From sequence record ON000910.1: 64,000 bases of DNA, one strand, 5' to 3'. A program made the position numbers and the translations under genes. Positions 2,389-20,398 of this stretch are shown here, piece by piece (position 1 is the stretch's first letter; every line of letters begins with the position of its first letter). The notes beneath the pieces were generated by a model. That model was not told where the DNA came from, ran no database searches, and saw nothing but the letters and a program-made list of their open reading frames with translations.

Positions 2389-2655
2389 ATGTCACAACAA
2401 ACTGCTGAACAAGTAATCGAACAGAAAGACGCACAAATCAAAGATCTTAAAGTGCGTACCTTTGACCTACAAGAGACTCTTCAAGAAGAGCGCAATTCTT
2501 TTGGTCAGTTCGTGGGTGTACTAGCTCAACTACTCGATTTCGATCAGACGCAAGCAAGTTCTCTACAGAACTACGTTGACGAAATCGCAATTCTAACCGG
2601 TAAAGCTGAACGTCCTGCTGAAGGCGACGGCGAACAAGAAAAAGACGCTGAATAA
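2389..2655 (+). CDS. 57A: Tail fibre assembly chaperone gp57A
   Basis: Small acidic coiled-coil protein between gene 1 and 57B, as in T4. Confidence 0.7.
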   Translation: MSQQTAEQVIEQKDAQIKDLKVRTFDLQETLQEERNSFGQFVGVLAQLLDFDQTQASSLQNYVDEIAILTGKAERPAEGDGEQEKDAE

Positions 2656-3110
2656 TGAAACTATCTAAGTTCCTTGAAAGTCAGGGAACTTACGTTGGTA
2701 TCAGATTAGACGAGGCGAGTAAGCAAGAGTTAGTTCGATTGCAGAAAACGCTTCGTCTAAAAAATCCGTTAGAACCAGATAAATTTCACGTGACTGTGCT
2801 TTATAGTCGTAAGCAAATTGATGTACCTGTTGTCGATACCACTTTCGTTGCTACTGTTGAACATATCGACTGTTGGAAAACGCAAGACGGCAAATATGCA
2901 GTTGTTGCTAAGATGGTATGTCCAGAACTTGTAGAACGTCACGATGATCTTATCTCTATCGGTGGTACTCACGACTACCCTGACTATACCCCTCACGTTA
3001 CGTTGTCTTATGACGACGCGATCACACCTATGTCCGTCAACGCTGAAGTTCGGCTTGTTGATGAATATCTTGAACCACTTGATTTAAATTGGGTTGATAG
3101 TAATGACTGA
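2655..3110 (+). CDS. acb1: 2H phosphoesterase gp57B / anti-CBASS nuclease Acb1
   Basis: Two HxT motifs (FHVTVLYSR, PHVTLSY), W.TQDG, G.THDY.DYTPH and EY.EPL.L.W as in T4 57B. Confidence 0.88.
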   Translation: MKLSKFLESQGTYVGIRLDEASKQELVRLQKTLRLKNPLEPDKFHVTVLYSRKQIDVPVVDTTFVATVEHIDCWKTQDGKYAVVAKMVCPELVERHDDLISIGGTHDYPDYTPHVTLSYDDAITPMSVNAEVRLVDEYLEPLDLNWVDSND

Positions 3111-3357
3111 TTTATCTACTGAAGCAGTATTAAAGAAGTACAATGAAGCTCCCGAAACTCTAACTACTGAAGAGAACGTTGTATTATTGACGTATATCAT
3201 CGGTATGCAGACCGATCAGATTGCTTTACTTAAAGAGAACAACAAACTTTACGATAAAGCTATCACTGAGCTTCAGCAAGCTGTATCTCAGCTTCAAATC
3301 AAGCACGCTGCGCTTGAACGAGGTGAGACAGAAAGCGGTATCATTCTTTCAGTATAA
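3103..3357 (+). CDS. Hypothetical coiled-coil protein
   Basis: ORF overlapping the 57B stop. Confidence 0.65.
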   Translation: MTDLSTEAVLKKYNEAPETLTTEENVVLLTYIIGMQTDQIALLKENNKLYDKAITELQQAVSQLQIKHAALERGETESGIILSV

Positions 3358-3365
3358 AAACTCTC

Positions 3366-3402
3366 AAAAAGTTGTTGACTTATTCTGAAAAGCATGTAGA
3401 AT
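3366..3402 (+). promoter_or_regulatory. Early (sigma70-like) promoter
   Basis: A-tract, TTGACT (3375), TG-TAGAAT (3397). Confidence 0.7.
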
Positions 3403-3458
3403 GTATTTCATCGAGTCGAGAGACAGAACACAAACTTTCAACTCGATGAAATATTTGA

Positions 3459-3495
3459 AAAAAGTTGTTGACTTACACTGAAATGATGTTAAGAT
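3459..3495 (+). promoter_or_regulatory. Early promoter driving the ncRNA/tRNA cluster
   Basis: AAAAAAGTTGTTGACT (same upstream block as 3366) ... TAAGAT; start site expected near 3502. Confidence 0.65.
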
Positions 3496-3503
3496 TAACA
3501 CAG

Positions 3504-3612
3504 TTGATTAAGCGAGCTAAGTTCATCGTTCTCGCCTCTTATTGAAGATGAACAATATTGATTAAGCAGACTAAACTCATCGTTTCTGCCTCTTCTCTGA
3601 AGATGAGTAATA
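3504..3612 (+). ncRNA. Two tandem 54/55-nt H-type pseudoknot repeats
   Basis: Unit 1: S1 GCGAG/CTCGC, S2 GTTCATC/GATGAAC. Unit 2: S1 GCAGA/TCTGC, S2 ACTCATC/GATGAGT. Compensatory changes with conserved linkers. Confidence 0.75.
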
Positions 3613-3760
3613 TTTTAAATGTGCGTTAGCCGCAATGAATACATGGAGCCAGTATACGTTCTGGCGTGCAGGGATACTCTTAGCGGACGAATTCTCAATC
3701 AAAAAACTAGCTGAGTTAAAATTCGCTCAGTCGGCGTGCAAGTAGCGCACATTTAAAATA
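3613..3760 (+). ncRNA. ~145-nt structured RNA with long terminal stem and a variant GCAA motif
   Basis: TATTTTAAATGTGCG / CGCACATTTAAAATA terminal stem; internal hairpins GCCAG/CTGGC and CTGAG/CTCAG; GTGCGT-TA-GCCGCAA ... GCGCAC. Confidence 0.6.
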
Positions 3761-3776
3761 TCGAGAGTACATTGGT

Positions 3777-3899
3777 CGAGTGTTGGTGTAGTGGCAGCAC
3801 ACGTAGCATACTGTAATCAGGCATGATTATATTCAGCAACCAATTTACGCATATCATAGGGAGATCGTGGGAACGGTTCGATTCCGTTACACTCGACCA
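3777..3899 (+). ncRNA. tRNA chimera 1: Pro-like scaffold (C1-G72, loop ATAGGGA) with 49-nt insert in the anticodon stem
   Basis: Acceptor CGAGTGT/ACACTCG-ACCA, D arm, T arm AACGG-TTCGATT-CCGTT; insert 3804-3852 contains GTAATC-AG..GATTAT-AT-TCAGCAA. Confidence 0.8.
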
Positions 3900-3932
3900 A
3901 TGTACTCTCACTTATCAAGCGAGGTGAACAAT

Positions 3933-4082
3933 TTGATTGTATATCTTCTCGCACTAGTATTCATCGTCCTCTTTGCCTTGGACATTGAAGAAGAAAAGGT
4001 GCGCATTCATACTTTTGCGCTAATCATATGCGAACGGGTCATTCATCCCGTAAATAAAGCGCACGATTTCAGGTTGTGTTGA
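3933..4082 (+). CDS. Small putative membrane peptide (TTG start)
   Basis: GAGGTG SD 6 nt upstream; hydrophobic N-terminus IVYLLALVFIVLFAL. Confidence 0.4.
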   Translation: MIVYLLALVFIVLFALDIEEEKVRIHTFALIICERVIHPVNKAHDFRLC

Positions 4083-4156
4083 TTAGCTAAGGCAAAATAA
4101 ACTAGAGAATTTTTGGTGCTTGTGATTAACCACAAGCACTCTCAAGAACATATTGA

Positions 4157-4281
4157 GCAGGGTTGGTGTAGTGGCTAGCACACGTAGCATAAACGCAAGC
4201 TGTTAAGTTTGTATTCTGCAATCAATTTAGCATATCATTTCCAAGATCGTGACGCAGGTTCGAATCCTGCACCCTGCTCAA
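4157..4281 (+). ncRNA. tRNA chimera 2: Gly-like scaffold (G1-C72, U73, TTCCAA loop, 3' CAA) with 49-nt insert
   Basis: GCAGGGT/ACCCTGC, T arm GCAGG-TTCGAAT-CCTGC; insert 4185-4233 contains GCAAGC-TG-TTA-A-GTTTGT-AT-TCTGCAA. Confidence 0.8.
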
Positions 4282-4289
4282 TATGTTTT

Positions 4290-4396
4290 TACTACTTTGC
4301 CAACGAGAAAAATAATTTTCGCGGGGTGTTGGTTAAAAGGTTCGAATCCTTGGTTAGGTAGCGTTTCGACGCCCTGACAAGCGAAACAAAGTAGTA
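4290..4396 (+). ncRNA. Multibranch RNA with a T-loop hairpin
   Basis: TACTACTTTG/CAAAGTAGTA closing stem; AAGG-TTCGAAT-CCTT; CCAAC/GTTGG and GTTAGG/CCTGAC stems. Confidence 0.55.
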
Positions 4397-4403
4397 ATAT
4401 AAT

Positions 4404-4521
4404 GGTGAAGTTAGTTCAGTAGGTTAGAACGCCGGCCAAAAAAAACGAAGTCTGATAAGATTTCATTCTGCATTCACATGCACGCCGGAGGTCGCAGGTT
4501 CGAGTCCTGCACTTCACCTTC
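4404..4521 (+). ncRNA. tRNA chimera 3: Asp-like scaffold with insert in the anticodon loop, no encoded CCA
   Basis: GTTC-AGTAGGTTA-GAAC D arm, CCGGC/GCCGG stem, T arm GCAGG-TTCGAGT-CCTGC; insert contains GAAGTC-TG-ATA-A-GATTTC-AT-TCTGCAT. Confidence 0.78.
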
Positions 4522-4528
4522 AAATTCT

Positions 4529-4653
4529 GGAGAGTTAGCTCAGTCTGGTAGAGCAAAAGAATGTTAAAGAATACTGACAAGCATTCATGCTGCAAACCTT
4601 AATAACTAGGTAAATCTTTTTGTCACGTGGTTCAAATCCCGTACTCTCCACCA
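4529..4653 (+). ncRNA. tRNA chimera 4: scaffold with AAAGA/TCTTT anticodon stem enclosing a 54-nt expanded loop
   Basis: GGAGAGT/ACTCTCC-ACCA, GCTC/GAGC D arm, TTCAAAT T loop; insert contains GAATAC-TG-ACA-A-GCATTC-AT-GCTGCAA. Confidence 0.78.
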
Positions 4654-4667
4654 ATTTTCGAGGGTTT

Positions 4668-5036
4668 ATGAATAAGTTTAATGACATTAATGACGAACTT
4701 GATTGTATATTGCATCGTTGTGAGATTGTAAAGCGCAATCTTCGAAAATATTGTACATTTGCTGTTGAAATGCAGTATAGACTTATGATAAACTTCATTG
4801 GCATGGGTTGCTATCAACAAGTTCTGCCGATATTAGACAATCTAAATTATCACCCTGATACAAGTCAGTTTGATAATATTGAGATTATGCAAACTATAAA
4901 AGAATTGATGAAATGTGCAGATAAGCTCGATGAGCTACATCAACAAGACGCTTTTCATCAAATTAAATCGACTGCTCGTATTACAGAAGAAGCAAACATC
5001 TTCGCTGCGAAAGTTGGTCGATTTCTGGAGAAATGA
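4668..5036 (+). CDS. Hypothetical protein
   Basis: GAGG SD before ATG 4668; the longer track start lies inside a tRNA-like RNA. Confidence 0.65.
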   Translation: MNKFNDINDELDCILHRCEIVKRNLRKYCTFAVEMQYRLMINFIGMGCYQQVLPILDNLNYHPDTSQFDNIEIMQTIKELMKCADKLDELHQQDAFHQIKSTARITEEANIFAAKVGRFLEK

Positions 5037-5037
5037 T

Positions 5038-5115
5038 GGCCCTATAGCTCAACACGGTTAGAGCAACCGACTCATAATCGGTAGGTTACAGGTTCGAGTC
5101 CTGTTGGGGTCACCA
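5038..5115 (+). tRNA. tRNA-CAT (elongator Met or Ile2)
   Basis: Full cloverleaf, loop CTCATAA, ACCA end. Confidence 0.9.
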
Positions 5116-5194
5116 AAAATAAATTGAAAAAGTTGTTGACAGACGTTTCATCAACGTGTAGTATACACATTATCAACTACACGAGGAAAACATT

Positions 5195-5425
5195 ATGTCA
5201 CATAAATTGCTAGTTATCACATCAATGCACGGTTGCTACGTCGATTACGATTTCAGAACTGAAATGTTTGACAGATACATGTGTGATGTTGTGATTCCGA
5301 ACGACTCTGTTGTTTTGTACTCGGGTACAGTTTCAATAGATGAAATTCAAGCAGTTGCGAACGAATGTTACGCTGACATCAAGATTGAAGAAGTCAGTGA
5401 TGATGTTTTTGACAGCTATCTTTAA
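5195..5425 (+). CDS. Hypothetical early protein
   Basis: Upstream TTGACA...TAGTAT promoter and GAGG SD. Confidence 0.7.
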   Translation: MSHKLLVITSMHGCYVDYDFRTEMFDRYMCDVVIPNDSVVLYSGTVSIDEIQAVANECYADIKIEEVSDDVFDSYL

Positions 5426-5429
5426 AAAT

Positions 5430-5669
5430 GCCGCTAACTGGCGTACAATACACAGTGTATTCCCAACATTAGTGCAGACGTAGGCTCGCAACCTACGTTG
5501 GTACCGAATCACTGGGACCGAGTAGAAAGTGCATGTGAGATGTCGAAGTCTTGTATGTAGAAATAACGCTCGGCTGCTCTGAAATGCTGATTAGCTCTTA
5601 CTTCGAAACTCTAATTGGGTGGAAGAGGTGTTGTGTTTGACGTGTGTTCGATTCACACGAGCGGCGCCA
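5430..5669 (+). ncRNA. 240-nt tRNA-like RNA with tmRNA-type architecture
   Basis: GCCGCT/AGCGGC-GCCA acceptor, CGTGTG-TTCGATT-CACACG T arm, AACTGG D-like loop, ACAATAC/GTGTTGT helix enclosing ~175 nt. Confidence 0.65.
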
Positions 5670-5682
5670 AGAGGAAATTATA

Positions 5683-6207
5683 ATGAAACCATTGAAGTTC
5701 GTTGAAGCGTTCTCTAAAGAAGAACGTGCTGCTATGACGATTGAAGAACGTAGCAGACTTCGTAAAATATATAACGAACGCTATCAAGAGTATGTTGATA
5801 AGTACATCAATGTATTCACTCGAAAAGACTTTCGAAGAGAGCGTTGCTGGGTTATTCTTGCACGATGTAAAAAGACTGGTGAAATCATCGGTCGAATTGA
5901 AAATAGTTTTAGTATGGGATGGTCTAAAGAACGTGTTCGTGTTATTCGACCGTATCTAAACGGTAATTTCACGGGCGATGATCGCTTCTCTAAAGCTGAG
6001 TACAACAAAGCGTGTGCTGAGTACATAACTCATCATGAGAAACAAGTAAAGTCTCTCAGAGAAGCTTACAAAGACACTCACGACGTTTTCTTATCTCGTG
6101 TGGGTAGTAAGAACTGTCCTGTTTCTATTGATTGGGATACGTATTACAATAAAAAAGACAAACGAAACTTTGAATATCGAAATTTGAAGTTCAAAACGAA
6201 ATCATAA
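5683..6207 (+). CDS. Hypothetical basic protein
   Basis: GAGG SD, ATG 5683; the track start lies within the T arm of the ncRNA. Confidence 0.7.
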   Translation: MKPLKFVEAFSKEERAAMTIEERSRLRKIYNERYQEYVDKYINVFTRKDFRRERCWVILARCKKTGEIIGRIENSFSMGWSKERVRVIRPYLNGNFTGDDRFSKAEYNKACAEYITHHEKQVKSLREAYKDTHDVFLSRVGSKNCPVSIDWDTYYNKKDKRNFEYRNLKFKTKS

Positions 6208-6238
6208 ATACTTTCTTTTAGAGTTTAGAGGAAGAAGT

Positions 6239-6535
6239 ATGAAAACGTTTGGTGAATTCCTAATTGAATTTGGTGGCGGCGGATTTCAATCTGGCGCTGC
6301 TGATGACAGTAGATTTTTAGAAGAACTTGTTCGCAGGTTGCAGAAGAAGCAAGTTCAAATTAGTAAGAAAACTGATTCTGTGAATTGGGGTCATGGTAAA
6401 ATCACGGTTAGAGATGGGAAAGTTCGTTATATTACGAAATATGATGGCCCGCGTGATTTCAAAGAGTTTAGTAGTACACGTGAATTCATGGATGCGTTCA
6501 TGAAAGGTGACTACACTCAATTGCAAGACAAATAA
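6239..6535 (+). CDS. Putative internal head protein
   Basis: N-terminus MKTFGEFLIE resembles the T4 capsid-targeting sequence; late promoter CATAAATA at 6203. Confidence 0.6.
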   Translation: MKTFGEFLIEFGGGGFQSGAADDSRFLEELVRRLQKKQVQISKKTDSVNWGHGKITVRDGKVRYITKYDGPRDFKEFSSTREFMDAFMKGDYTQLQDK

Positions 6536-6540
6536 TTTAT

Positions 6541-6656
6541 AGTCGGGTAGCTCAGTGGTAGAGCACGAAGAATGATACTGACAAGTATCGCTCCAGCACT
6601 CCTTCAATTGCCTGTTAAGCACGTGGTCGCTGGTTCGAATCCAGCCCCGACTACCA
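6541..6656 (+). ncRNA. tRNA chimera 5: Asn(GTT) scaffold with 41-nt insert in the anticodon stem
   Basis: Removing 6568-6608 gives CGTGC-CTGTTAA-GCACG and a 75-nt cloverleaf with ACCA; insert contains TGATAC-TG-ACA-A-GTATCG-CT-CCAGCAC. Confidence 0.82.
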
Positions 6657-6682
6657 TTTTTGATAAACTAGTGAGGTATAAC

Positions 6683-6919
6683 ATGAGCGGAACATTTAAT
6701 ATCAACAAAACGTTACTGACTCCGAAACAATTGCGCAATCTAACAGATGAGCGTCTAAATGAATATCGCAAGTCGTTTCGTAAGCCTCTTGGTTTTTTGA
6801 AGCATCTGAACGATACAAACGAATTGACTTCAGATCAACACAAGAAATTCGTTGAGCTTAATAAGCACTATAACGACGAAATCCTTGTTGAAATGAACAA
6901 GCGAAAACACTTAGGTTAA
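6683..6919 (+). CDS. Hypothetical protein
   Basis: GAGG SD before ATG 6683. Confidence 0.65.
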   Translation: MSGTFNINKTLLTPKQLRNLTDERLNEYRKSFRKPLGFLKHLNDTNELTSDQHKKFVELNKHYNDEILVEMNKRKHLG

Positions 6920-7187
6920 TAAAATCGCAGAAAGTTGAAATTTTTTTCAATTTTCTGCGAAAATATCGCAAATCGTCAGATTTAGTGTTATAAGTACTAT
7001 AAAGAAACAAAACAAATTTTAATTTTTATTTCAAGAGAGCATTCAATGACGCATTCGTTTACACATTCATCTGAGACATTACGCAGCGATTTTCTGCGCT
7101 CAGAATTCGTGTATCTAGCGAATCCGATTGCGAACCAGAAGTGGGATACCCTCTTGTAGTCCGATAGTATAACATAGAAGTATACTT

Positions 7188-7212
7188 GAGGACGCAAATA
7201 GCGTCCTTTTTT
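7188..7212 (+). terminator. Rho-independent terminator
   Basis: GGACGC-AAATA-GCGTCC followed by T7. Confidence 0.8.
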
Positions 7213-7290
7213 TATGGGCGCAATAAAAGTCAAAAATTTTGTTTAACGTACTTTGATTACAGAGTATGATAAACAAAGTTAAAGAACAAA

Positions 7291-7364
7291 CGGGACGTGG
7301 CGTAAAGGTAGCGTTCATGCTTTGGGAGCATGTGGTAAGAGTTCGAGTCTCTTCGTCCCGACCA
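7291..7364 (+). tRNA. tRNA-Pro(TGG)
   Basis: Cloverleaf, loop TTTGGGA, ACCA. Confidence 0.9.
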
Positions 7365-8716: not shown

Positions 8717-8721
8717 GTTTT

Positions 8722-8809
8722 AGCTTGCATACTGCAATTTAACTTAATCTATTGATCGCTCGGCGGGCATTGCTCAGACAGCGATAAACAGACCAAAGAA
8801 CGCAAGCTG
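8722..8809 (+). ncRNA. Stand-alone GCAA-motif RNA
   Basis: A-GCTTGC-AT-ACTGCAA ... GCAAGC-TG. Confidence 0.7.
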
Positions 8810-8818
8810 TTGAATAAT

Positions 8819-8895
8819 TGCGGAGTAGAGCAGCGGTCAGCTCGCCAGTTTCATAAGCTGGAGGTCAGTGGTTCGAATCCACTCTCACGCATCCA
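8819..8895 (+). tRNA. tRNA-Met(CAT), initiator-like D arm, irregular acceptor stem
   Basis: GAGC/GCTC D stem, loop TTCATAA, extra A in 3' acceptor strand, TCCA; lacks the GGG/CCC pairs of fMet. Confidence 0.7.
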
Positions 8896-9223: not shown

Positions 9224-9282
9224 AGTAATCTTACAGCAAACAATACAAAACTTTTATTTGGAAAAAGCAAAAAGGATTACTG
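9224..9282 (+). ncRNA. Minimal GCAA-motif RNA
   Basis: A-GTAATC-TT-ACAGCAA ... GATTAC-TG with an A-rich loop. Confidence 0.7.
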
Positions 9283-9292
9283 TTTAAATTTA

Positions 9293-9368
9293 GGATCGCT
9301 AACTCAATGGTTAGAGTGCTCGCCTGTTAAGCGAGGAGTTCCGAGTTCGAGTCTCGGGCGGTCCGCCA
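9293..9368 (+). tRNA. tRNA-Asn(GTT)
   Basis: Loop CTGTTAA, GCCA. Confidence 0.92.
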
Positions 9369-9615: not shown

Positions 9616-9732
9616 AGAGTGTTTTCAGCAAACAATTTACTAATATTCTTCTGATGAAAAGAAAAGTTCGGGGTTCGATTCCTCTTCAGTGTCGGTATCA
9701 CTGGTCTGGACGACGCTAGTAATAACACTCAG
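9616..9732 (+). ncRNA. GCAA-motif RNA enclosing a T-loop module (YrlA-like layout)
   Basis: A-GAGTGT-TT-TCAGCAA ... ACACTC-AG; internal GGGG-TTCGATT-CCTC and CAGTG/CACTG hairpins. Confidence 0.72.
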
Positions 9733-9874: not shown

Positions 9875-10150
9875 ATGTCTATTAAAACATTTTCTGAATA
9901 TCTTAACGAAGCAAAGCATCGTGGGTCTGGCGTAGACACTCATGACGGGAAGATTCCGTATGTATACGCTGACAGTAAAGACGCTGCTGCATTTGCTGAT
10001 TTCGTATCGTCAATAGGTATGAAGCTTGATTCGAACGGTGAATTGAAGCTTTCTACACGAGATAAAGTACGAAAGTTCTTCTCAGAGCTTGATCAAGAAG
10101 CAACTAATTTCATGCTTCATGGCAACTTTGATATTATTGAATATATGTAA
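9875..10150 (+). CDS. Putative internal head protein
   Basis: MSIKTFSEYLNE capsid-targeting-like N-terminus; late promoter; GAGG SD. Confidence 0.62.
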   Translation: MSIKTFSEYLNEAKHRGSGVDTHDGKIPYVYADSKDAAAFADFVSSIGMKLDSNGELKLSTRDKVRKFFSELDQEATNFMLHGNFDIIEYM

Positions 10151-10382: not shown

Positions 10383-10457
10383 GGGCCGTTAGCTTAATTG
10401 GGAAAGCGCCTCACTTGCAATGAGGAAGATAGGGTTCGACTCCCTGCGTGTCCACCA
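10383..10457 (+). tRNA. tRNA-Ala(TGC), irregular acceptor stem
   Basis: Loop CTTGCAA, G3-U70, ACCA. Confidence 0.8.
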
Positions 10458-10670: not shown

Positions 10671-10787
10671 AGACAATATACAGCAAACAATTGAAATTAC
10701 TTAAAAGAAGTGATGATCTTAACCTGGGCTGATTTTAACCTGAGCTTGCTTGGGCGCAGCTTGAAAGGAAAGATTCTCTCTGTCTAG
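10671..10787 (+). ncRNA. GCAA-motif RNA
   Basis: A-GACAAT-AT-ACAGCAAACAATT ... TGTC-TAG (4 of 6 bp). Confidence 0.6.
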
Positions 10788-10789
10788 AA

Positions 10790-11127
10790 ATAGTCAGATA
10801 GGCGCGTCGCTGAAACAGACGATATTTGCTTATTGAGAATCAATAAGCTAGTCAACTCCGATTTATGCAAAAGACGAAAAAACACTTCGGTATTGTCTGT
10901 ACTTAATTCGTCGGAAACGACACTGTAGCCGAAAGGCAAGTTTACTAACTTAGTTGTTAGTCGTGATACAGGAAGTATCATGTGGCATTATTATGAACGT
11001 TTCTAGTCATCGTCATGTAAAACAATCAAAACTAAGCAGAGGTAACAGTACCCACTATGTGGTTCCTCACTCAGACCATGAATATATGGTGTCAGCCAGT
11101 GTGCGATTAAATGAGTAATTACTGCAA
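10790..11127 (+). ncRNA. Candidate ~340-nt structured RNA with GAAA tetraloops, ending in a permuted GCAA motif
   Basis: GTCG-GAAA-CGAC, GCC-GAAA-GGC, GCTTATTG/CAATAAGC, TGATAC/GTATCA; TCACTC-AG ... GAGTAA-TT-ACTGCAA. Confidence 0.5.
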
Positions 11128-12769: not shown

Positions 12770-12858
12770 GGAAGCATGGTCTAAAGGTATGACAGCACCC
12801 TGCTAAGGTGTCGGACGTTAATAGCGTTCTCTGGGTTCGACTCCCAGTGCTTCCGCCA
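12770..12858 (+). tRNA. tRNA-Ser(GCT)
   Basis: Loop CTGCTAA, long variable arm, GCCA. Confidence 0.9.
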
Positions 12859-12863
12859 AATTC

Positions 12864-13122
12864 GCAATAAGACATTGTACAGCAATCATTACAAATCAAA
12901 GCAAACTTTAATAGTAATGAGGCGCACTAGCTGCTTTCTCAGTGATGACGTGAGCCTGTCGCATTCTCGTGGTAGGAAATGACCATTAAGACGGTGTTCG
13001 TACTGTCAAACGAAATAGGACTCATGCCGAATCATGGGTATTTTTCCGATGAGAAACATCGTTATAGTCAATTGAGATTTAAGGAAAGACGATAAAACAC
13101 TTCTTGAATGTCTGTGTATTGC
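12864..13122 (+). ncRNA. ~255-nt GCAA-motif RNA, last in the cluster
   Basis: GCAATA-A-GACATT-GT-ACAGCAA ... AATGTC-TG-TG-TATTGC; internal CATTAC/GTAATG, GACGGTG-TTCG-TACTGTC, CGATG/CATCG. Confidence 0.72.
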
Positions 13123-16951: not shown

Positions 16952-17299
16952 ATGTTTGTAATGATTGATGATATGCGTGATATCGATAATTTCACTGCGC
17001 CTGAAATTTCCGCAGATCAGAAGCTTGTTTTGCGTACGTATGAAGACGGTATGAAATTCGTCAAACATACGAATCTTACAGATATTACTTTATTCATGGA
17101 CAATGATCTAGGCGGTGCTCTTGGTCATGAGGGATATGATATTCTCTCTCATGCAATTGATCATCGTAACTTCCCACGCACAGTTGTTCTAGTAACGAGT
17201 AACCCTGTTGCTCACTCTAAGATGACTATGATGTTGATGAACACACTTCAATATAAACGTGTGGGTTCTATCTTTATGAGGCAAGATACATGCACTTAA
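16952..17299 (+). CDS. Cyclic-phosphate-processing receiver-like (cREC) domain protein
   Basis: IDD.R, LF.DNDLG, GYDIL, V.SNPV motifs of the stand-alone phage receiver family. Confidence 0.65.
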   Translation: MFVMIDDMRDIDNFTAPEISADQKLVLRTYEDGMKFVKHTNLTDITLFMDNDLGGALGHEGYDILSHAIDHRNFPRTVVLVTSNPVAHSKMTMMLMNTLQYKRVGSIFMRQDTCT

Positions 17300-18301: not shown

Positions 18302-18394
18302 AAAAAAAGTGTTTACACGCATTAAAATTCGCGTATAATCACTTCATCAAAGACATTTTACAGCAATTAATTATGAGGAAATGAACAATGTCAG
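18302..18394 (+). promoter_or_regulatory. Early promoter plus GCAA-motif leader enclosing SD and AUG of the Ro60-like gene
   Basis: GTTTAC (18311)-17 bp-TATAAT (18334); A-GACATT-TT-ACAGCAA-TTAATT-ATGAGGAAATGAAC-AATGTC-AG, with ATG 18388 inside the 3' strand. Confidence 0.8.
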
Positions 18395-19824
18395 TATTTA
18401 TGAACGCAATGCAAACAAACGATTCACGCACAGCAAACGGTGCAGTTACTCACAGCACTTCAGGTAACGAGTGTCTAAACTTGTTCTTCGGTATTGCTGC
18501 TATGCGTGGCAACGATCAGTCTAAAACACTGTTCGGTCGTGCGTTTGCAGAAAACCCAGAACTAGCGACACGCATTCTTTTGTGGTCTCGTGATGTTCGC
18601 GGTGGTGCGGGTGAACGTGGTACTTTCCGTACTCTATTCACTAAACTTTGTAATGAACAGCCTGACGTAGCTCGTGCTGTAATGTCGAAAATTCCAGAAC
18701 TAGGTCGTTACGATGACTTAATTTCTGCTTTCGGTACACGTCTTGAACAAGATGCGATCACAATGTGGTCGAACGCAATTGTCAATGACAAGAATGGTCT
18801 TGCTGCGAAGTGGTTCCCACGTGAAAACAGCAAAAACGGTCATGTGTTCAAGCGCACAATCAAGTCTCTTGGCGTGACTGCGAAGCAGTGGCGTAAGATT
18901 CTGTCGCTTCTGTCTGACACTGTTGAGCAGAAGATGTGTGCGCAAAAATGGGATGCAATCGACTTCGGTAAGTTGCCTTCTGTAGCGTCTGCTCGTTATC
19001 AACAAGCATTCGGTCGTAACGCTTCAGCTCGTTACACAAGCTACATCGAGTCACTTCAAAAAGGTGAAGCGAAGATCAACGCTGGCGCATTGTTCCCATA
19101 CGATGTCGTTAAGAGCGTTAGTCACGGTAATGCGTCTGTAGCGAACGAGCAATGGAAAGCTCTGCCAAACTACATGGAAGGTTCTGATGAGCGCATCATC
19201 CCTGTTGTTGACGTGTCTGGCTCTATGAGCACGCCAATCAACGCAGGTACTGATCATTCAGGTGTGACTTGTAAGCAAGTTGCAATGTCTCTGGGTGTAT
19301 ATGTTGCTGAACGCAACGAAGGCATCTTCAAAGATCAATTCATTTCGTTCTCAAGCGACCCGCACTTCCACCAGTTGCGCGGTAGCTCATTGAAAGAGCG
19401 TCTTGATAACATGAATCGTTCAGGCGAAGACATGAGTACGAACATCGGTAAGTGCTTTGATGTTCTGCTAGAGCGTGCGAAGCGTGCAAATCTTTCACAA
19501 GAAGATATGCCAACCAAGTTGCTTATCATGAGTGACATGGAATTCGATCAAGCAAACACTGGTGGTGGTTGGTACGGTCGCGGTGAACCTGCGAACTTCG
19601 ATGCAATCAAAGCCAAGTACGCACGTGCTGGTTATGAAATGCCACAACTGGTCTTCTGGAACATTCGTGGTCGTCTTGGCAACGTTCCGGTTAAAGCTGG
19701 TGAAGCGGGTACTGCACTGGTATCTGGTTGTAGCCCATCTATCTTGACTTCACTGTTGGGTGGTGAGCTTGAGCCAATCAAGATCATGATGAAAACTGTA
19801 GGCGTCGAACGCTACAGCTTTTAA
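18388..19824 (+). CDS. DUF2828 family TROVE/Ro60-like protein with C-terminal vWA (MIDAS) domain
   Basis: T.NGA..HSTSG, RDVRGG.GER..FR, AAKW.PRE, KINAGALFPYD, PVVDVSGSM, SDMEFD, P.LVFWN motifs. Confidence 0.85.
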   Translation: MSVFMNAMQTNDSRTANGAVTHSTSGNECLNLFFGIAAMRGNDQSKTLFGRAFAENPELATRILLWSRDVRGGAGERGTFRTLFTKLCNEQPDVARAVMSKIPELGRYDDLISAFGTRLEQDAITMWSNAIVNDKNGLAAKWFPRENSKNGHVFKRTIKSLGVTAKQWRKILSLLSDTVEQKMCAQKWDAIDFGKLPSVASARYQQAFGRNASARYTSYIESLQKGEAKINAGALFPYDVVKSVSHGNASVANEQWKALPNYMEGSDERIIPVVDVSGSMSTPINAGTDHSGVTCKQVAMSLGVYVAERNEGIFKDQFISFSSDPHFHQLRGSSLKERLDNMNRSGEDMSTNIGKCFDVLLERAKRANLSQEDMPTKLLIMSDMEFDQANTGGGWYGRGEPANFDAIKAKYARAGYEMPQLVFWNIRGRLGNVPVKAGEAGTALVSGCSPSILTSLLGGELEPIKIMMKTVGVERYSF

Positions 19825-19873
19825 ATAAGTGATAAGGGCGGCATTGTGCTGCCCTTTTTTGTAAGAGGTGAAA

Positions 19874-20398
19874 ATGTTCGATTGGGAAGCGATAGAAACA
19901 GCTATCAATAACAGTCATCCAAATAGCACAATATACGTTGGGTGTGATAGTAAGCGTAAAAGTGACATGATTAGTTACGCGACTGTGATCATAATTCATC
20001 TTGAAGGTAGTAAAGGTGCTCAAGTGTTTAAAGCAGTTGAGACTGAACCTGCATACTTATCATGTAAAGATGGTATCAGAAGTCGATTGATGAATGAAGT
20101 ATACAAAGCGGGTGAAACTGCACTAATGGTTAAGCCAATGTGCGGTACTAGAGGCTTTGAAGTTCACGTTGACATCAACCCTGACCCCACACACAAATCT
20201 CACGTTGCCTATAACGAAGCTAAAGGTACTATATTGGGATATGTTGGTCAAGAGCCCGTGTTCAAACCTGATGCGTTTGCTGCGTCTTGTGCTGCTGATT
20301 ACGACGCAGTTCGAAGGGCAGATAAAATCGCTAAACGAAAAGAACTTAGACGAGCTAAACGAAAAGCAAAGAAACAAAAAACAAAAGGGCGCAAATAG
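19874..20398 (+). CDS. YkuK/DUF458 RNase H-like protein
   Basis: IYVGCDS, YATVIIIH, RLMNEV, EVHVDIN, KPDAFAASCAAD motifs; basic C-terminal tail. Confidence 0.75.
   Translation: MFDWEAIETAINNSHPNSTIYVGCDSKRKSDMISYATVIIIHLEGSKGAQVFKAVETEPAYLSCKDGIRSRLMNEVYKAGETALMVKPMCGTRGFEVHVDINPDPTHKSHVAYNEAKGTILGYVGQEPVFKPDAFAASCAADYDAVRRADKIAKRKELRRAKRKAKKQKTKGRK

What the first reader, a model, noticed from the sequence alone, without database searches (positions are those of the whole stretch)
3777..6656. Five tRNA scaffolds whose anticodon arm carries a grafted copy of the motif
Chimeras at 3777, 4157, 4404, 4529 and 6541 keep intact acceptor, D and T arms. Each has a ~40-50-nt insert containing the permuted motif with independent compensatory pairs (GTAATC/GATTAT, GCAAGC/GTTTGT, GAAGTC/GATTTC, GAATAC/GCATTC, TGATAC/GTATCG). 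The scaffolds derive from different tRNAs (Pro-, Gly-, Asp-, Asn-like and one unclear), so the graft happened repeatedly or was kept across divergence. Normal Pro, Gly, Asp and Asn tRNAs exist elsewhere in the cluster, so these copies are not needed for decoding. Inference: they are tRNA-shaped Y-like RNAs, topologically the inverse of YrlA.
Basis: partly seen in the sequence, partly recalled or inferred. Interest (0 to 1): 0.9.

Follow-up and report, generated by a model that had tools for sequence, protein, structure and literature searches.

The report
tRNA-shaped Y RNAs in a vibriophage
Five "pseudo-tRNAs" of a KVP40-like Vibrio phage are conserved tRNA-shaped RNAs whose anticodon arm carries the module typical of phage Y RNAs, the likely partners of the phage's own Ro60-like protein, so they look like circularly permuted relatives of bacterial YrlA and not like decaying tRNA genes.

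Summary
The window is Vibrio phage XZ1, a KVP40-like phage. It holds five 112-125-nt tRNA-like genes, A to E, each with an intact acceptor stem, D arm and T arm. In each, the anticodon region carries a 7-bp hairpin followed by an invariant C-N-GCA(A).

The hairpin covaries within all five families. Element E is 97-100% identical across phages whose flanks are about 87% identical. This rules out decay.

The same RNA occurs in circularly permuted (YrlA-like) order in other phages. On every contig long enough to check, it lies directly beside a DUF2828/DUF7788 gene.

The window encodes the orthologue of that gene at 18388-19824. Its AlphaFold model matches only Ro60 structures at full length.

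The same stem plus ACAGCAA module recurs beside the Ro-like gene of a mycobacteriophage, a FelixO1-like phage and RSP15. It also occurs as stand-alone units in this window's tRNA cluster and in the 5'UTR of the Ro-like gene.

The "tRNA-shaped Y RNA, inverse of YrlA" reading is therefore supported. Binding to the protein and the function remain inferred. The claimed Pro/Gly/Asp/Asn origins of the scaffolds are weak. D and E do keep a GUU (Asn) anticodon.

Verdict: a new variant of a known kind.

The parts
3763..3909 (+). Element A. The tRNA-like core is 3777-3899. It has a 7-bp acceptor stem, D arm 3786-3802, T arm 3872-3888 and an encoded ACCA. A covarying 14-bp extension of the acceptor stem pairs 3763-3776 with 3896-3909.
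   Evidence: 118.6 bits; A is a training sequence of the model, so this hit is by construction; folding z-score -7.3.
3801..3869 (+). Y module of A. It comprises invariant ACGUAGC (3801-3807), the Y stem-loop (3812-3831), UUCAGCAAC (3832-3840), and GCAU plus the 3-bp P3 hairpin plus CGUG (3849-3869).
4147..4287 (+). Element B. The core is 4157-4281 and there is a covarying 10-bp acceptor extension. The Y stem-loop is at 4195-4212, AUUCUGCAAU at 4213-4222, P3 plus CGUG at 4230-4251, and the T arm at 4254-4270.
   Evidence: (118.7 bits; B is a training sequence of the model, so this hit is by construction).
4405..4518 (+). Element C. The anticodon-proximal stem pairs CCGGC (4432-4436) with GCCGG (4484-4488). 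The Y stem-loop is at 4447-4464 and AUUCUGCAU at 4465-4473. A second small hairpin lies at 4469-4482. No conserved anticodon is present.
   Evidence: tRNA model, 56.1 bits; 49.1 bits.
4529..4653 (+). Element D. The stem pairs AAAGA (4556-4560) with UCUUU (4615-4619). AUGUUAA with a conserved GUU lies at 4561-4567. The Y stem-loop is at 4569-4586 and AUGCUGCAAA at 4587-4596. A hairpin at 4597-4610 carries UAAC, which is complementary to GUUA. ACCA is encoded.
   Evidence: 50.1 bits; 49.0 bits.
6541..6656 (+). Element E. The anticodon stem reads CG(6566-6567)[41-nt insert]UGC-CUGUUAA-GCA(6609-6621)CG(6622-6623). The Y stem-loop is at 6573-6590 and CUCCAGCAC at 6591-6599. ACCA is encoded.
   Evidence: 49.8 bits; 97-100% identity in 30 genomes; UGC/GCA becomes AGC/GCU in D479; 70.7 bits.
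18388..19824 (+). Ro60-like protein of 478 aa (DUF2828 plus the DUF7788 vWA domain; PHROG 850 'RNA-binding protein'). It is the presumed protein partner.
   Evidence: pLDDT 79; the top six Foldseek hits are all Ro60, with TM-scores 0.48-0.58.
18351..18368 (+). AGACAUU-UUACAGCAAU in the 5'UTR of the Ro-like gene, downstream of a GTTTAC-17-TATAAT promoter-like site. It may be an autoregulatory copy of the motif.
   Evidence: conserved in K566; UAUACAGCA in D479.
3619..3752 (+). Stand-alone unit in Y topology. The terminal stem pairs AUGUGCG with CGCACAU. UUAGCCGCAAUGAA follows the 5' strand and AAGUAGC precedes the 3' strand.
   Evidence: folding z-score -3.3.
9224..9281 (+). Small stand-alone Y module between tRNA-Trp and tRNA-Asn: AGUAAUC-UUACAGCAAAC ... 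AGCAAAAAG-GAUUACU.
   Evidence: KVP40 has the compensatory AGCAAUC/GAUUGCU.
9617..9730 (+). YrlA-topology unit. The stem pairs GAGUGUU with AACACUC. It carries UUCAGCAAAC, a T-arm-like GGGGUUCGAUUCCUC and a closed hairpin.

Best explanation
The five elements are stable non-coding RNAs built as tRNA/Y-RNA chimeras.

Anatomy:
- A tRNA body carries a Y module in place of, or inserted into, the anticodon arm. The body has a 7-bp acceptor stem, D arm, T arm and intact D/T-loop signature residues. CCA is encoded in A, D and E.
- The Y module is a 7-bp helix. Its 5' strand is preceded by (AC)GUAGC(A) and an A-rich linker. Its 3' strand is followed by NNC-N-GCA(A).

Shown:
- The helix and the tRNA arms are maintained by compensatory evolution.
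- The same RNA exists in circularly permuted (YrlA) order beside Ro60-like genes in other phages.
- This phage encodes a protein with the Ro60 fold.

Inferred:
- The RNAs are transcribed with the early/tRNA region.
- C, D and E are trimmed like tRNAs by RNase P and the 3' processing enzymes.
- A and B keep, or are cut from, a long terminal helix.
- The Y module is the docking site for the Ro60-like protein.
- The tRNA body is the effector end. By analogy with Ro60-Y RNA-PNPase particles, it would tether the Ro-like protein to a tRNA-binding enzyme or nuclease.
- Alternatively it would present a tRNA look-alike to one. D and E mimic tRNA-Asn, GUU included.
- The purpose would be RNA surveillance or counter-defence during infection.
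For: Conservation and covariation:
- Orthologue alignments show compensatory changes in the hairpin in all five families.
- Alignment A2: 98.2% of cells pair, and the covariation score is 0.67 against 0.16 in shuffles. The Y stem changes on both sides in 7/7 pairs and P3 in 3/3.
- Across all families (alignment A3), 97.6% pair and the score is 0.80 against 0.19.
- E is 97-100% identical where the whole region is about 87% identical.

Permuted homologues:
- They share UUGGUGUA..GCACACGUAGC, ACAGCAAC, GCAUAUCAU and GAUCGUG.
- All eight contigs that were long enough have the DUF2828 gene next to the RNA, although the search pattern was RNA-only.

The protein:
- The window protein 18388-19824 matches Pfam DUF2828 and DUF7788.
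- Its AlphaFold model (pLDDT 79) hits phage phiLo Ro60 and Xenopus Ro60 as the only matches at E<=1e-3, over its full length.

The same module elsewhere:
- Three units lie downstream of the Ro-like gene of mycobacteriophage Krypton555. One is a 38-bit YrlA hit.
- Four units lie in FelixO1-like VpaE1. One of them has the D arm UGGUGUAAUGGUAGCAC.
- RSP15 has similar units.
- Aeromonas phage PX29 has an E-like element that keeps CUGUUAA.
- The motif also lies in the 5'UTR of the Ro-like gene.

Model search:
- Model R1 was trained on A/B-type RNAs only. It scores E at 70.7 bits and C and D at 49 bits.

Literature:
- YrlA RNAs lie beside Ro60 in bacteria and phages and mimic tRNA (PMC4201824).
- Phage phiLo Ro60 binds phage Y-like RNAs and the host PNPase (PMC12135203).
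- In Bas63, the Ro60-like gp130 lies upstream of the tRNA genes and counters the Ppl defence system (bioRxiv 10.1101/2024.10.10.617714).
Against: - No binding or expression data exist for these RNAs.
- The canonical Ro-site motif GNCGAA/CGAA is absent. The link between C-N-GCAA and the protein rests on co-occurrence and position only.
- The Rfam YrlA model does not hit the elements. The single 32-bit hit spans the C/D junction and is an artefact.
- In this phage the protein gene lies 12-15 kb from the RNAs.
- C and D score only about 7 bits above the best canonical tRNA with R1.
- D's Y stem has an A.C mismatch in the KVP40 group.
- Alignment A3 is fitted to the model.
- A window-wide regex for stem plus CNGCA finds 59 hits on the + strand, counting overlapping registers of one site separately, against 21-36 in ten mononucleotide shuffles. 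It is too noisy to prove the stand-alone copies.
- The sequence-only PDB search did not reach Ro60 significantly (E=0.21).
Confidence: 0.6

Rival explanations
1. The elements are tRNA-like decoys or regulators that work without the Ro-like protein. The conserved module would be bound by another factor, such as a host anticodon nuclease, a tRNA-modifying enzyme, an aminoacyl-tRNA synthetase, or the neighbouring cREC or RNase H-like proteins. Alternatively it is a self-contained tertiary motif.
For: - GUU is invariant in D and E while positions 33, 37 and 38 vary. U33 becomes C in K566/D480 (D) and in D479 (E).
- PX29 keeps CUGUUAA.
- The RNAs sit in the tRNA cluster, 12-15 kb from the Ro-like gene.
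- Genes for cREC and an RNase H-like protein flank the Ro-like gene.
Against: - The tight adjacency of the permuted form to the DUF2828 gene on eight independent contigs needs another explanation. So does the presence of the same module beside that gene in four unrelated phage groups.
Confidence: 0.22
2. They are intron-containing tRNA genes. The insert is excised and the halves are joined, for example by phage RNA ligases. D and E would yield functional tRNA-Asn.
For: - Removing 41 nt from E leaves a perfect CGUGC-CUGUUAA-GCACG arm.
- D has GUU at positions 34-36, with the insert after the loop.
- The UGC/GCA pair in E covaries to AGC/GCU in D479.
- tRNAscan-based annotations call them tRNAs with introns.
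- KVP40 is known, from my own knowledge, to encode the RNA ligase Rnl2.
Against: - A, B and C have no conserved anticodon.
- The insert position differs between D and E.
- U33 is lost in some orthologues.
- The insert is itself a conserved, covarying module. It also exists as stand-alone and permuted RNAs beside Ro-like genes.
- It is too short for a group I intron, and Rfam finds no intron or ribozyme in the region.
- A canonical tRNA-Asn is present at 9293.
- 57B, annotated as 'RNA ligase', is in fact Acb1.
Confidence: 0.08
3. They are decaying pseudo-tRNAs or tRNA genes hit by a small mobile DNA insertion, with no RNA-level function.
For: - The KVP40 record annotates C, D and E as tRNA-Pseudo-5, -4 and -3.
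- A and B show a short direct repeat, UAGCAUA, around the hairpin region.
Against: - Compensatory changes occur in every helix.
- E is more conserved than its flanks.
- The elements are retained across genera and in metagenomic phages.
Confidence: 0.03

Closest known systems
YrlA (Y RNA-like A, Rfam RF02553) of Salmonella, Mycobacterium and mycobacteriophages
   Same: It has a tRNA-like T arm, D arm and acceptor-type helix joined to a stem module. It is encoded with a Ro60-type protein. In the phage versions the stem is followed by ACAGCAA, as it is here.
   Different: - Its topology is circularly permuted. In YrlA the RNA ends form the Ro-site stem and the acceptor is closed. Here the acceptor is open, with CCA in A, D and E, and the Y stem is a closed hairpin.
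- The GNCGAA motif is replaced by C-N-GCAA.
- The Rfam model scores below its threshold.
- There are five paralogues per genome.
- D and E keep an anticodon.
Thermus phage phiLo Ro60 with Yrl1/Yrl2 (PMC12135203; PDB 9KOP, 9L5Y)
   Same: It is a phage-encoded protein with the Ro60 fold plus phage-encoded Y-like RNAs. It is the best structural match of the window protein.
   Different: - The phiLo RNAs are simple stem-bulge-stem RNAs with CGAA, located next to the gene.
- The protein is TROVE-type by sequence. The window protein is DUF2828/DUF7788.
Bas63 (Felixounavirus) gp130, Ro60-like, a counter to the Ppl defence system (bioRxiv 10.1101/2024.10.10.617714)
   Same: The same protein family lies directly upstream of a phage tRNA cluster. 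The authors guessed that some 'tRNA genes' there might be Y RNAs. The related phage VpaE1 does carry the module.
   Different: No RNA was defined in that work. The FelixO1-type units found here are in Y topology, not tRNA topology.
Circularly permuted tRNA genes of Cyanidioschyzon merolae, and engineered 'tRNA scaffolds' for expressing recombinant RNA (from my own knowledge)
   Same: The 3' half, CCA, a linker and the 5' half follow in that order in the permuted phage forms. A foreign RNA is carried in the anticodon arm of a tRNA body that supplies processing and stability.
   Different: Those are either true tRNAs after processing or artificial constructs. Neither carries a Ro-type module.
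Phage T4 stable RNAs, species 1 and 2 (rnaC, rnaD)
   Same: They are 119-139-nt stable RNAs of unknown function at the end of the T4 tRNA cluster, in the same 57A-57B-tRNA synteny. rnaC has a T arm.
   Different: Model R1 hits only the true tRNAs of T4. No stem plus CNGCAA module is evident in them.

Membership tests
Y RNA / YrlA | Encoded together with a Ro60 (TROVE HEAT-ring plus vWA) protein | tested here: met
   A protein with the Ro60 fold lies at 18388-19824. The permuted homologues lie directly beside the orthologous gene on eight contigs.
Y RNA / YrlA | The 5' and 3' ends pair to form the long stem that carries the Ro site | tested here: not met
   In A-E the motif-bearing stem is an internal closed hairpin. 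The RNA ends form the acceptor stem. The long terminal helix of A and B extends the acceptor stem, not the Y stem.
Y RNA / YrlA | Conserved GNCGAA(N)G / CGAA motif (PMC4201824, PMC12135203) | tested here: not met
   CGAA is not conserved. It occurs only in window C and E and is lost in orthologues. Invariant C-N-GCAA occupies the equivalent position.
Y RNA / YrlA | tRNA-like domain with T and D arms | tested here: met
   The Rfam tRNA model hits C, D and E. The D and T stems are conserved or covary.
Y RNA / YrlA | Scores above the Rfam RF02553 gathering score (69 bits) | tested here: not met
   The only hit scores 32 bits and spans the T arm of C and the D arm of D, so it is an artefact. The phage YrlA-like units score 23-38 bits.
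Y RNA / YrlA | Physical binding to Ro60 | not testable with these tools
   This needs RIP/CLIP or EMSA.
tRNA (RF00005) | Cloverleaf with a 7-bp acceptor stem, D arm, T arm and T-loop UUCRANY | tested here: met
tRNA (RF00005) | 5-bp anticodon stem closing a 7-nt loop with U33 and a conserved anticodon | tested here: not met
   A, B and C have none. D has GUU but a loop of about 54 nt. E has CUGUUAA on a stem interrupted by 41 nt. U33 becomes C in some orthologues.
Intron-containing tRNA (group I, or bulge-helix-bulge type) | Group I intron core, or a bulge-helix-bulge at both splice sites | tested here: not met
   The inserts are 41-54 nt long. Rfam finds no intron or ribozyme family even at E<=5. 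The insert position differs between D and E. The bulge-helix-bulge was judged only by inspection.
T4 species 1/2 RNAs | Sequence or structure similarity to rnaC or rnaD | tested here: not met
   R1 finds only the true tRNAs in the T4 locus.

The most novel reading that the evidence does not exclude
The tRNA-topology forms are working tRNA mimics, with CCA ends and possibly aminoacylated or modified. They would couple the phage's Ro60-like anti-defence protein to host enzymes that target tRNA. D, E and the PX29 element would present an Asn GUU anticodon loop as bait or decoy for an anticodon nuclease or another GUN-specific factor.

Together with their permuted relatives, they would also be living intermediates. 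They would show that Y RNAs arose from tRNA genes by insertion of a Ro-binding module into the anticodon arm, followed by circular permutation.
Probability: 0.2. Interest if true: 0.85.

Novelty: new variant of a known kind. Interest (0 to 1): 0.7.

Why it matters
These genes have been labelled 'pseudo-tRNA' or 'tRNA with intron' since the KVP40 genome was annotated, and they have been ignored.

If they are Ro-partner RNAs, several things follow:
- Phage Y RNAs come in two interconvertible topologies.
- Many large phages carry several per genome, hidden inside their tRNA clusters.
- The widespread DUF2828 'RNA-binding protein' gains a defined RNA ligand motif, a stem plus C-N-GCAA. That protein occurs in 710 phage records and has been linked in Bas63 to countering a defence system.

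This would make the function of bacterial and phage Ro60-Y RNA particles directly testable in a tractable phage-host pair. It would also bear on the origin of Y RNAs from tRNAs. Finally, it would improve the annotation of phage tRNA clusters.

Tried and rejected
1. The upstream gene 57B is annotated as 'RNA ligase'. I considered it as a splicing or ligation partner. It is Acb1, an anti-CBASS phosphodiesterase, and its position is inherited T4 synteny.
2. A loose three-block DNA pattern run on the viral contigs returned 116 stretches, all of them chance matches. That scan was wasted.
3. The search for related loci with the 57B protein returned only VH7D and KVP40.
4. Single-sequence AlphaFold of the Ro-like protein was useless (pLDDT 38). 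Sequence and profile searches against the PDB reached a TROVE protein only at E=0.21. The alignment-based model was needed.
5. I considered hammerhead and other small ribozymes because of the CUGAYAAG loop. The loop is not conserved, and Rfam finds no ribozyme.
6. T4 rnaC and rnaD as homologues: there is no similarity by model R1.
7. Derivation of the scaffolds from the window's own Pro, Gly, Asp or Asn tRNAs: only weak similarity.
8. A window-wide regex for stem plus CNGCA gives too many background matches to stand alone. The stand-alone copies rest on flanking motifs and on orthologue comparison.
9. Literature searches on KVP40 pseudo-tRNAs found only counts of 'pseudo-forms' and no functional proposal.

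Full report
**What the window is**

Bases 3300-7300 are 100% identical to Vibrio phage XZ1 and 87% identical to KVP40. The phage is a Schizotequatrovirus, a T4-like vibriophage. The finding lies at the head of the phage's tRNA cluster, which holds 26 ARAGORN tRNAs up to position 12858.

**Check of the observation**

- ARAGORN reports none of the five elements.
- The Rfam tRNA model scores three of them above its gathering score: 4405-4518 at 56.1 bits, 4529-4650 at 50.1 bits and 6541-6653 at 49.8 bits. Each has 46-54 extra nucleotides in the anticodon arm.
- A scan for a 7-bp acceptor stem plus a T arm, 95-140 nt apart, recovers 3777, 4157, 4405 and 6541. D has one T-stem mismatch and was added by hand.
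- Public records already carry these genes. KVP40 calls C, D and E tRNA-Pseudo-5, -4 and -3. phi-Grn1 calls them tRNA-OTHER, Cys, Phe, Asn and Val, with introns.
- Every hairpin is followed by NNC-N-GCA.

**Are they maintained?**

I fetched the orthologous region from 11 related phages and aligned each family by sequence alone. The hairpin changes by compensatory substitutions in every family.

| Family | Hairpin variants among orthologues |
|---|---|
| A | GUAAUC/GAUUAU, then GCAAGU/GCUUGU, then GCUUAC/GUAAGU |
| B | GCAAGC/GUUUGU, then CUGAUUC/GAAUCUG, then AUUAUUC/GAAUAGU |
| C | GAAGUC/GAUUUC, then GGAUUC/GAAUC |
| D | GAAUAC/GCAUUC, then GAAUAU/GUAUUC, then GUAUUC/GAAUGC |
| E | GAUAC/GUAUC, then GAUUC/GAAUC |

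The loop varies freely (UGAYAA, UGUUAA, AGGCAU, UGGAAA).

Results on a MAFFT alignment of 21 A/B-type RNAs:
- 98.2% of cells pair, against 72.1% in shuffles.
- The covariation score is 0.67, against 0.16 in shuffles and 0.04-0.10 when partners are slid.
- All 7 pairs of the acceptor stem, all 7 pairs of the hairpin and 4 of the 5 T-stem pairs change on both sides.
- So do all 3 pairs of a further small hairpin, P3 (AUC/GAU, ACU/AGU, GAA/UUC).

A model-fitted alignment of 34 distinct RNAs from all families gives 97.6% paired cells and a score of 0.80 against 0.19. That alignment leans towards the structure it was fitted to.

E is 96.8-100% identical in 30 genomes whose surrounding 4 kb is about 87% identical.

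**Anatomy**

Invariant single-stranded letters in the A/B type are UGGUGUA, CACACGUAGC, C-N-GCAA, GC and CGU.

The architecture, 5' to 3', is:
1. acceptor stem
2. D arm
3. a short proximal 'anticodon' stem
4. GUAGC(A) and an A-rich linker
5. the 7-bp Y stem
6. NNC-N-GCAA
7. a variable part (GCAU plus P3 in A and B)
8. the 3' strand of the proximal stem
9. T arm
10. acceptor stem

The proximal stem differs by family: ACG/CGU in A and B, CCGGC/GCCGG in C, AAAGA/UCUUU in D, and CG/CG in E.

Family-specific features:
- **E.** The 41-nt insert interrupts the 5' strand of the anticodon stem, so a complete UGC-CUGUUAA-GCA stem-loop remains. In D479, UGC/GCA becomes AGC/GCU.
- **D.** AUGUUAA follows the stem directly. 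GUU is invariant while positions 33, 37 and 38 vary.
- **A, B and C.** No conserved anticodon is present.
- **A and B.** These elements, and three D479 elements, have a 10-14-bp extension of the acceptor stem. It also covaries (GAGAGUAC/GUACUCUC, then GAAAGCAU/GUGCUUUC, then UAGAGCAU/AUGCUCUA).
- **C, D and E.** These have tRNA-like single-stranded flanks.

The tRNA bodies resemble the window's canonical tRNAs only weakly. The Pro/Gly/Asp labels are therefore not supported.

**The decisive lead: permuted copies**

I searched viral and metagenomic contigs for the RNA-only pattern TTGGTGTA-N5-11-GCACACGTAGC. The search found two kinds of hit.

*More tRNA-topology members.* Up to about eight occur per contig in uncultured large phages.

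*Copies in rearranged order*. They read:
1. Y-stem strand
2. UUACAGCAAC
3. GCAUAUCAUU
4. GAUCGUGG
5. T arm
6. acceptor 3' strand with CCA
7. a 5-10-nt linker
8. acceptor 5' strand
9. D arm
10. GUAGCAAAAAG
11. the other Y-stem strand

This is exactly a circular permutation. The hairpin loop of the window's elements is opened and the acceptor end is closed. That is the topology of YrlA.

These permuted RNAs lie immediately downstream of a 480-aa gene. A local tblastn shows the gene beside the RNA on all eight contigs that are long enough.

**The protein**

- It matches Pfam DUF2828 plus DUF7788, a vWA domain.
- The window encodes the orthologue at 18388-19824: DUF2828 at 3e-29, DUF7788 at 2e-46, and PHROG 850 'RNA-binding protein'.
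- Sequence searches of the PDB do not reach Ro60.
- An AlphaFold model built on 33 homologues (pLDDT 79, pTM 0.79) does. Its six best Foldseek matches are the only ones at E<=1e-3.
- They are Thermus phage phiLo Ro60 (9L5Y, 9KOP) and Xenopus Ro60 (1YVR, 2I91), aligned over the full length with TM-scores of 0.48-0.58.
- tblastn finds the family in 710 phage records, among them 56 Vibrio phages. Mycobacteriophage records annotate it as 'Ro-like RNA binding protein'.
- The gene typically lies at or inside the tRNA cluster.

**The same module beside that gene elsewhere**

- **Mycobacteriophage Krypton555.** The 370-nt spacer after the gene holds three units. Each has a GUGGAC.../...GUCCAG stem whose 5' strand is followed by (A)ACAGCAA. 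The middle unit has a T arm, a closed acceptor and a D arm, and is a 38-bit YrlA hit. The third also has GCUAAUGAAA, as in the L023-type inserts.
- **FelixO1-like VpaE1.** It has four CAGAAGACC-NUUACAGCAAA...GGUCUGG units in the tRNA cluster just after its gene. One has a T arm, a closed acceptor and the D arm UGGUGUAAUGGUAGCAC, nearly that of A and B.
- **RSP15.** It has similar units.
- **Aeromonas phage PX29.** This phage also encodes the protein. It has a tRNA-topology element scoring 60.8 bits with model R1, and the element again keeps CUGUUAA.

**In the window itself**

Stand-alone units in Y topology lie between the tRNAs.

| Position | Note |
|---|---|
| 3619-3752 | Terminal stem AUGUGCG/CGCACAU |
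| 8721-8809 | |
| 9224-9281 | Compensatory change in KVP40 |
| 9617-9730 | Has a T-arm-like hairpin |
| 10671-10898 | |
| 12870-13113 | Pairing less certain |

AGACAUU-UUACAGCAAU lies in the 5'UTR of the Ro-like gene. It is conserved in K566, and as UAUACAGCA in D479. This hints at autoregulation.

Model R1 was trained only on A/B-type RNAs. It scores E at 70.7 bits and C and D at 49 bits. The best canonical tRNA in the window scores 42 bits. The link of C and D to the family therefore rests mainly on the hairpin plus CNGCA and on the orthologue covariation.

**Mechanism**

*Shown:*
- The RNAs are conserved and structured.
- They are related to Y-topology RNAs by circular permutation.
- They are genomically coupled to a protein with the Ro60 fold.

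*Inferred:*
- The Y stem with GUAGC and C-N-GCAA is the docking site for that protein. It stands where GNCGAA stands in YrlA (PMC4201824).
- The tRNA body provides processing, stability and an interface to tRNA-binding factors.
- This is by analogy with Ro60-Y RNA-PNPase particles (PMC4201824, PMC12135203). It is also by analogy with the anti-defence role reported for the Bas63 homologue (bioRxiv 10.1101/2024.10.10.617714).
- Neighbouring genes for cREC (16952-17299) and an RNase H-like protein (19868-20398) fit an RNA-repair or conflict context (PMC7824862).

**Rivals**

- *Splicing to functional tRNA-Asn.* This is conceivable for D and E only. It does not explain A-C, the stand-alone and permuted copies, or the loss of U33.
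- *A Ro-independent decoy role.* This cannot be excluded.
- *Pseudogenes.* Excluded.

**Comparison with the known, and novelty**

Y RNAs that mimic tRNA are known, and so are phage Ro60 homologues. One preprint guessed that some phage 'tRNA genes' might be Y RNAs.

What I did not find described:
- the open-acceptor, tRNA-topology form
- its multiplicity per genome
- the C-N-GCAA module shared across DUF2828 phages
- the permutation series linking tRNA and YrlA topologies

The elements fail three formal YrlA criteria: terminal Ro-site stem, GNCGAA and the Rfam score. I therefore file them as a new variant that works like a Y RNA, not as members of RF02553.

Noticed in passing
window 2655-3110 (+): The gene annotated '57B RNA ligase' in T4-like phages matches Pfam Acb1, the anti-CBASS 2H phosphodiesterase, at 6.8e-46. 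It is not an RNA ligase.
   Followed up: yes
window 16952-17299 and 19868-20398 (+): A cREC (cyclic-phosphate-processing receiver) domain protein and an RNase H-like (PF04308) protein flank the Ro60-like gene. This suggests an RNA-repair or conflict gene neighbourhood.
   Followed up: partly
window 5430-5672 (+): A non-coding stretch of about 240 nt whose ends form a tRNA-like acceptor stem (GCCGCU/AGCGGC plus GCCA) next to a T arm (GUGUGUUCGAUUCACAC). It has no ARAGORN tmRNA hit and no Rfam hit. Its folding z-score is only -1.7.
   Followed up: partly
window 3480-3605 (+): Two tandem units of about 57 nt (GAUUAAGCGAGCUAAGUUCAUCGUUCUCGCCUCUUAUUGAAGAUGAAC... and a close copy) lie downstream of two strong sigma-70-like promoters at 3375-3402 and 3468-3495. 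They may be small RNAs.
   Followed up: no
window 4290-4400 (+): A structured spacer between B and C. It has the terminal stem ACUACUUUG/CAAAGUAGU, a T-arm-like AAGGUUCGAAUCCUU and a GUUUCG...CUGACAAG-CGAAAC hairpin. It is absent or replaced in several relatives.
   Followed up: no
window 8820-8891 and 10383-10454 (+): Two tRNA genes found by the Rfam tRNA model (55.1 and 44.9 bits) are missed by ARAGORN.
   Followed up: no
window 3763-3776/3896-3909 and 4147-4156/4278-4287: A and B have leader-trailer helices that extend the acceptor stem by 14 and 10 bp and covary among phages. The encoded ACCA of A is base-paired in the precursor. Their maturation may therefore differ from that of C, D and E.
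   Followed up: partly
L021 about 9990-10110 (-), L160 upstream of 8310, L155: Some contigs carry a second Y-topology RNA next to the first: GGUUGGGUU-CAGCAAAC..T arm..closed acceptor..D arm..AACCAACC. In L153, L155, L156 and L173 the 5' half of the permuted RNA is replaced by a different sequence.
   Followed up: partly
L013 (phage T4) 2409-2672 (-): T4 shares the 57A-57B-tRNA-cluster synteny. Its cluster ends with the stable RNAs rnaD and rnaC, whose function is unknown. They showed no similarity to the module.
   Followed up: partly
L001 (KVP40) 5391-5514: KVP40 has a further 124-nt tRNA-like element (acceptor CAGAAUG/CAUUCUG, T arm GUGAGUUCAAGUCUCAC) after tRNA-Arg. It lacks the stem plus CNGCA module and has no counterpart at the same place in the window.
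   Followed up: no
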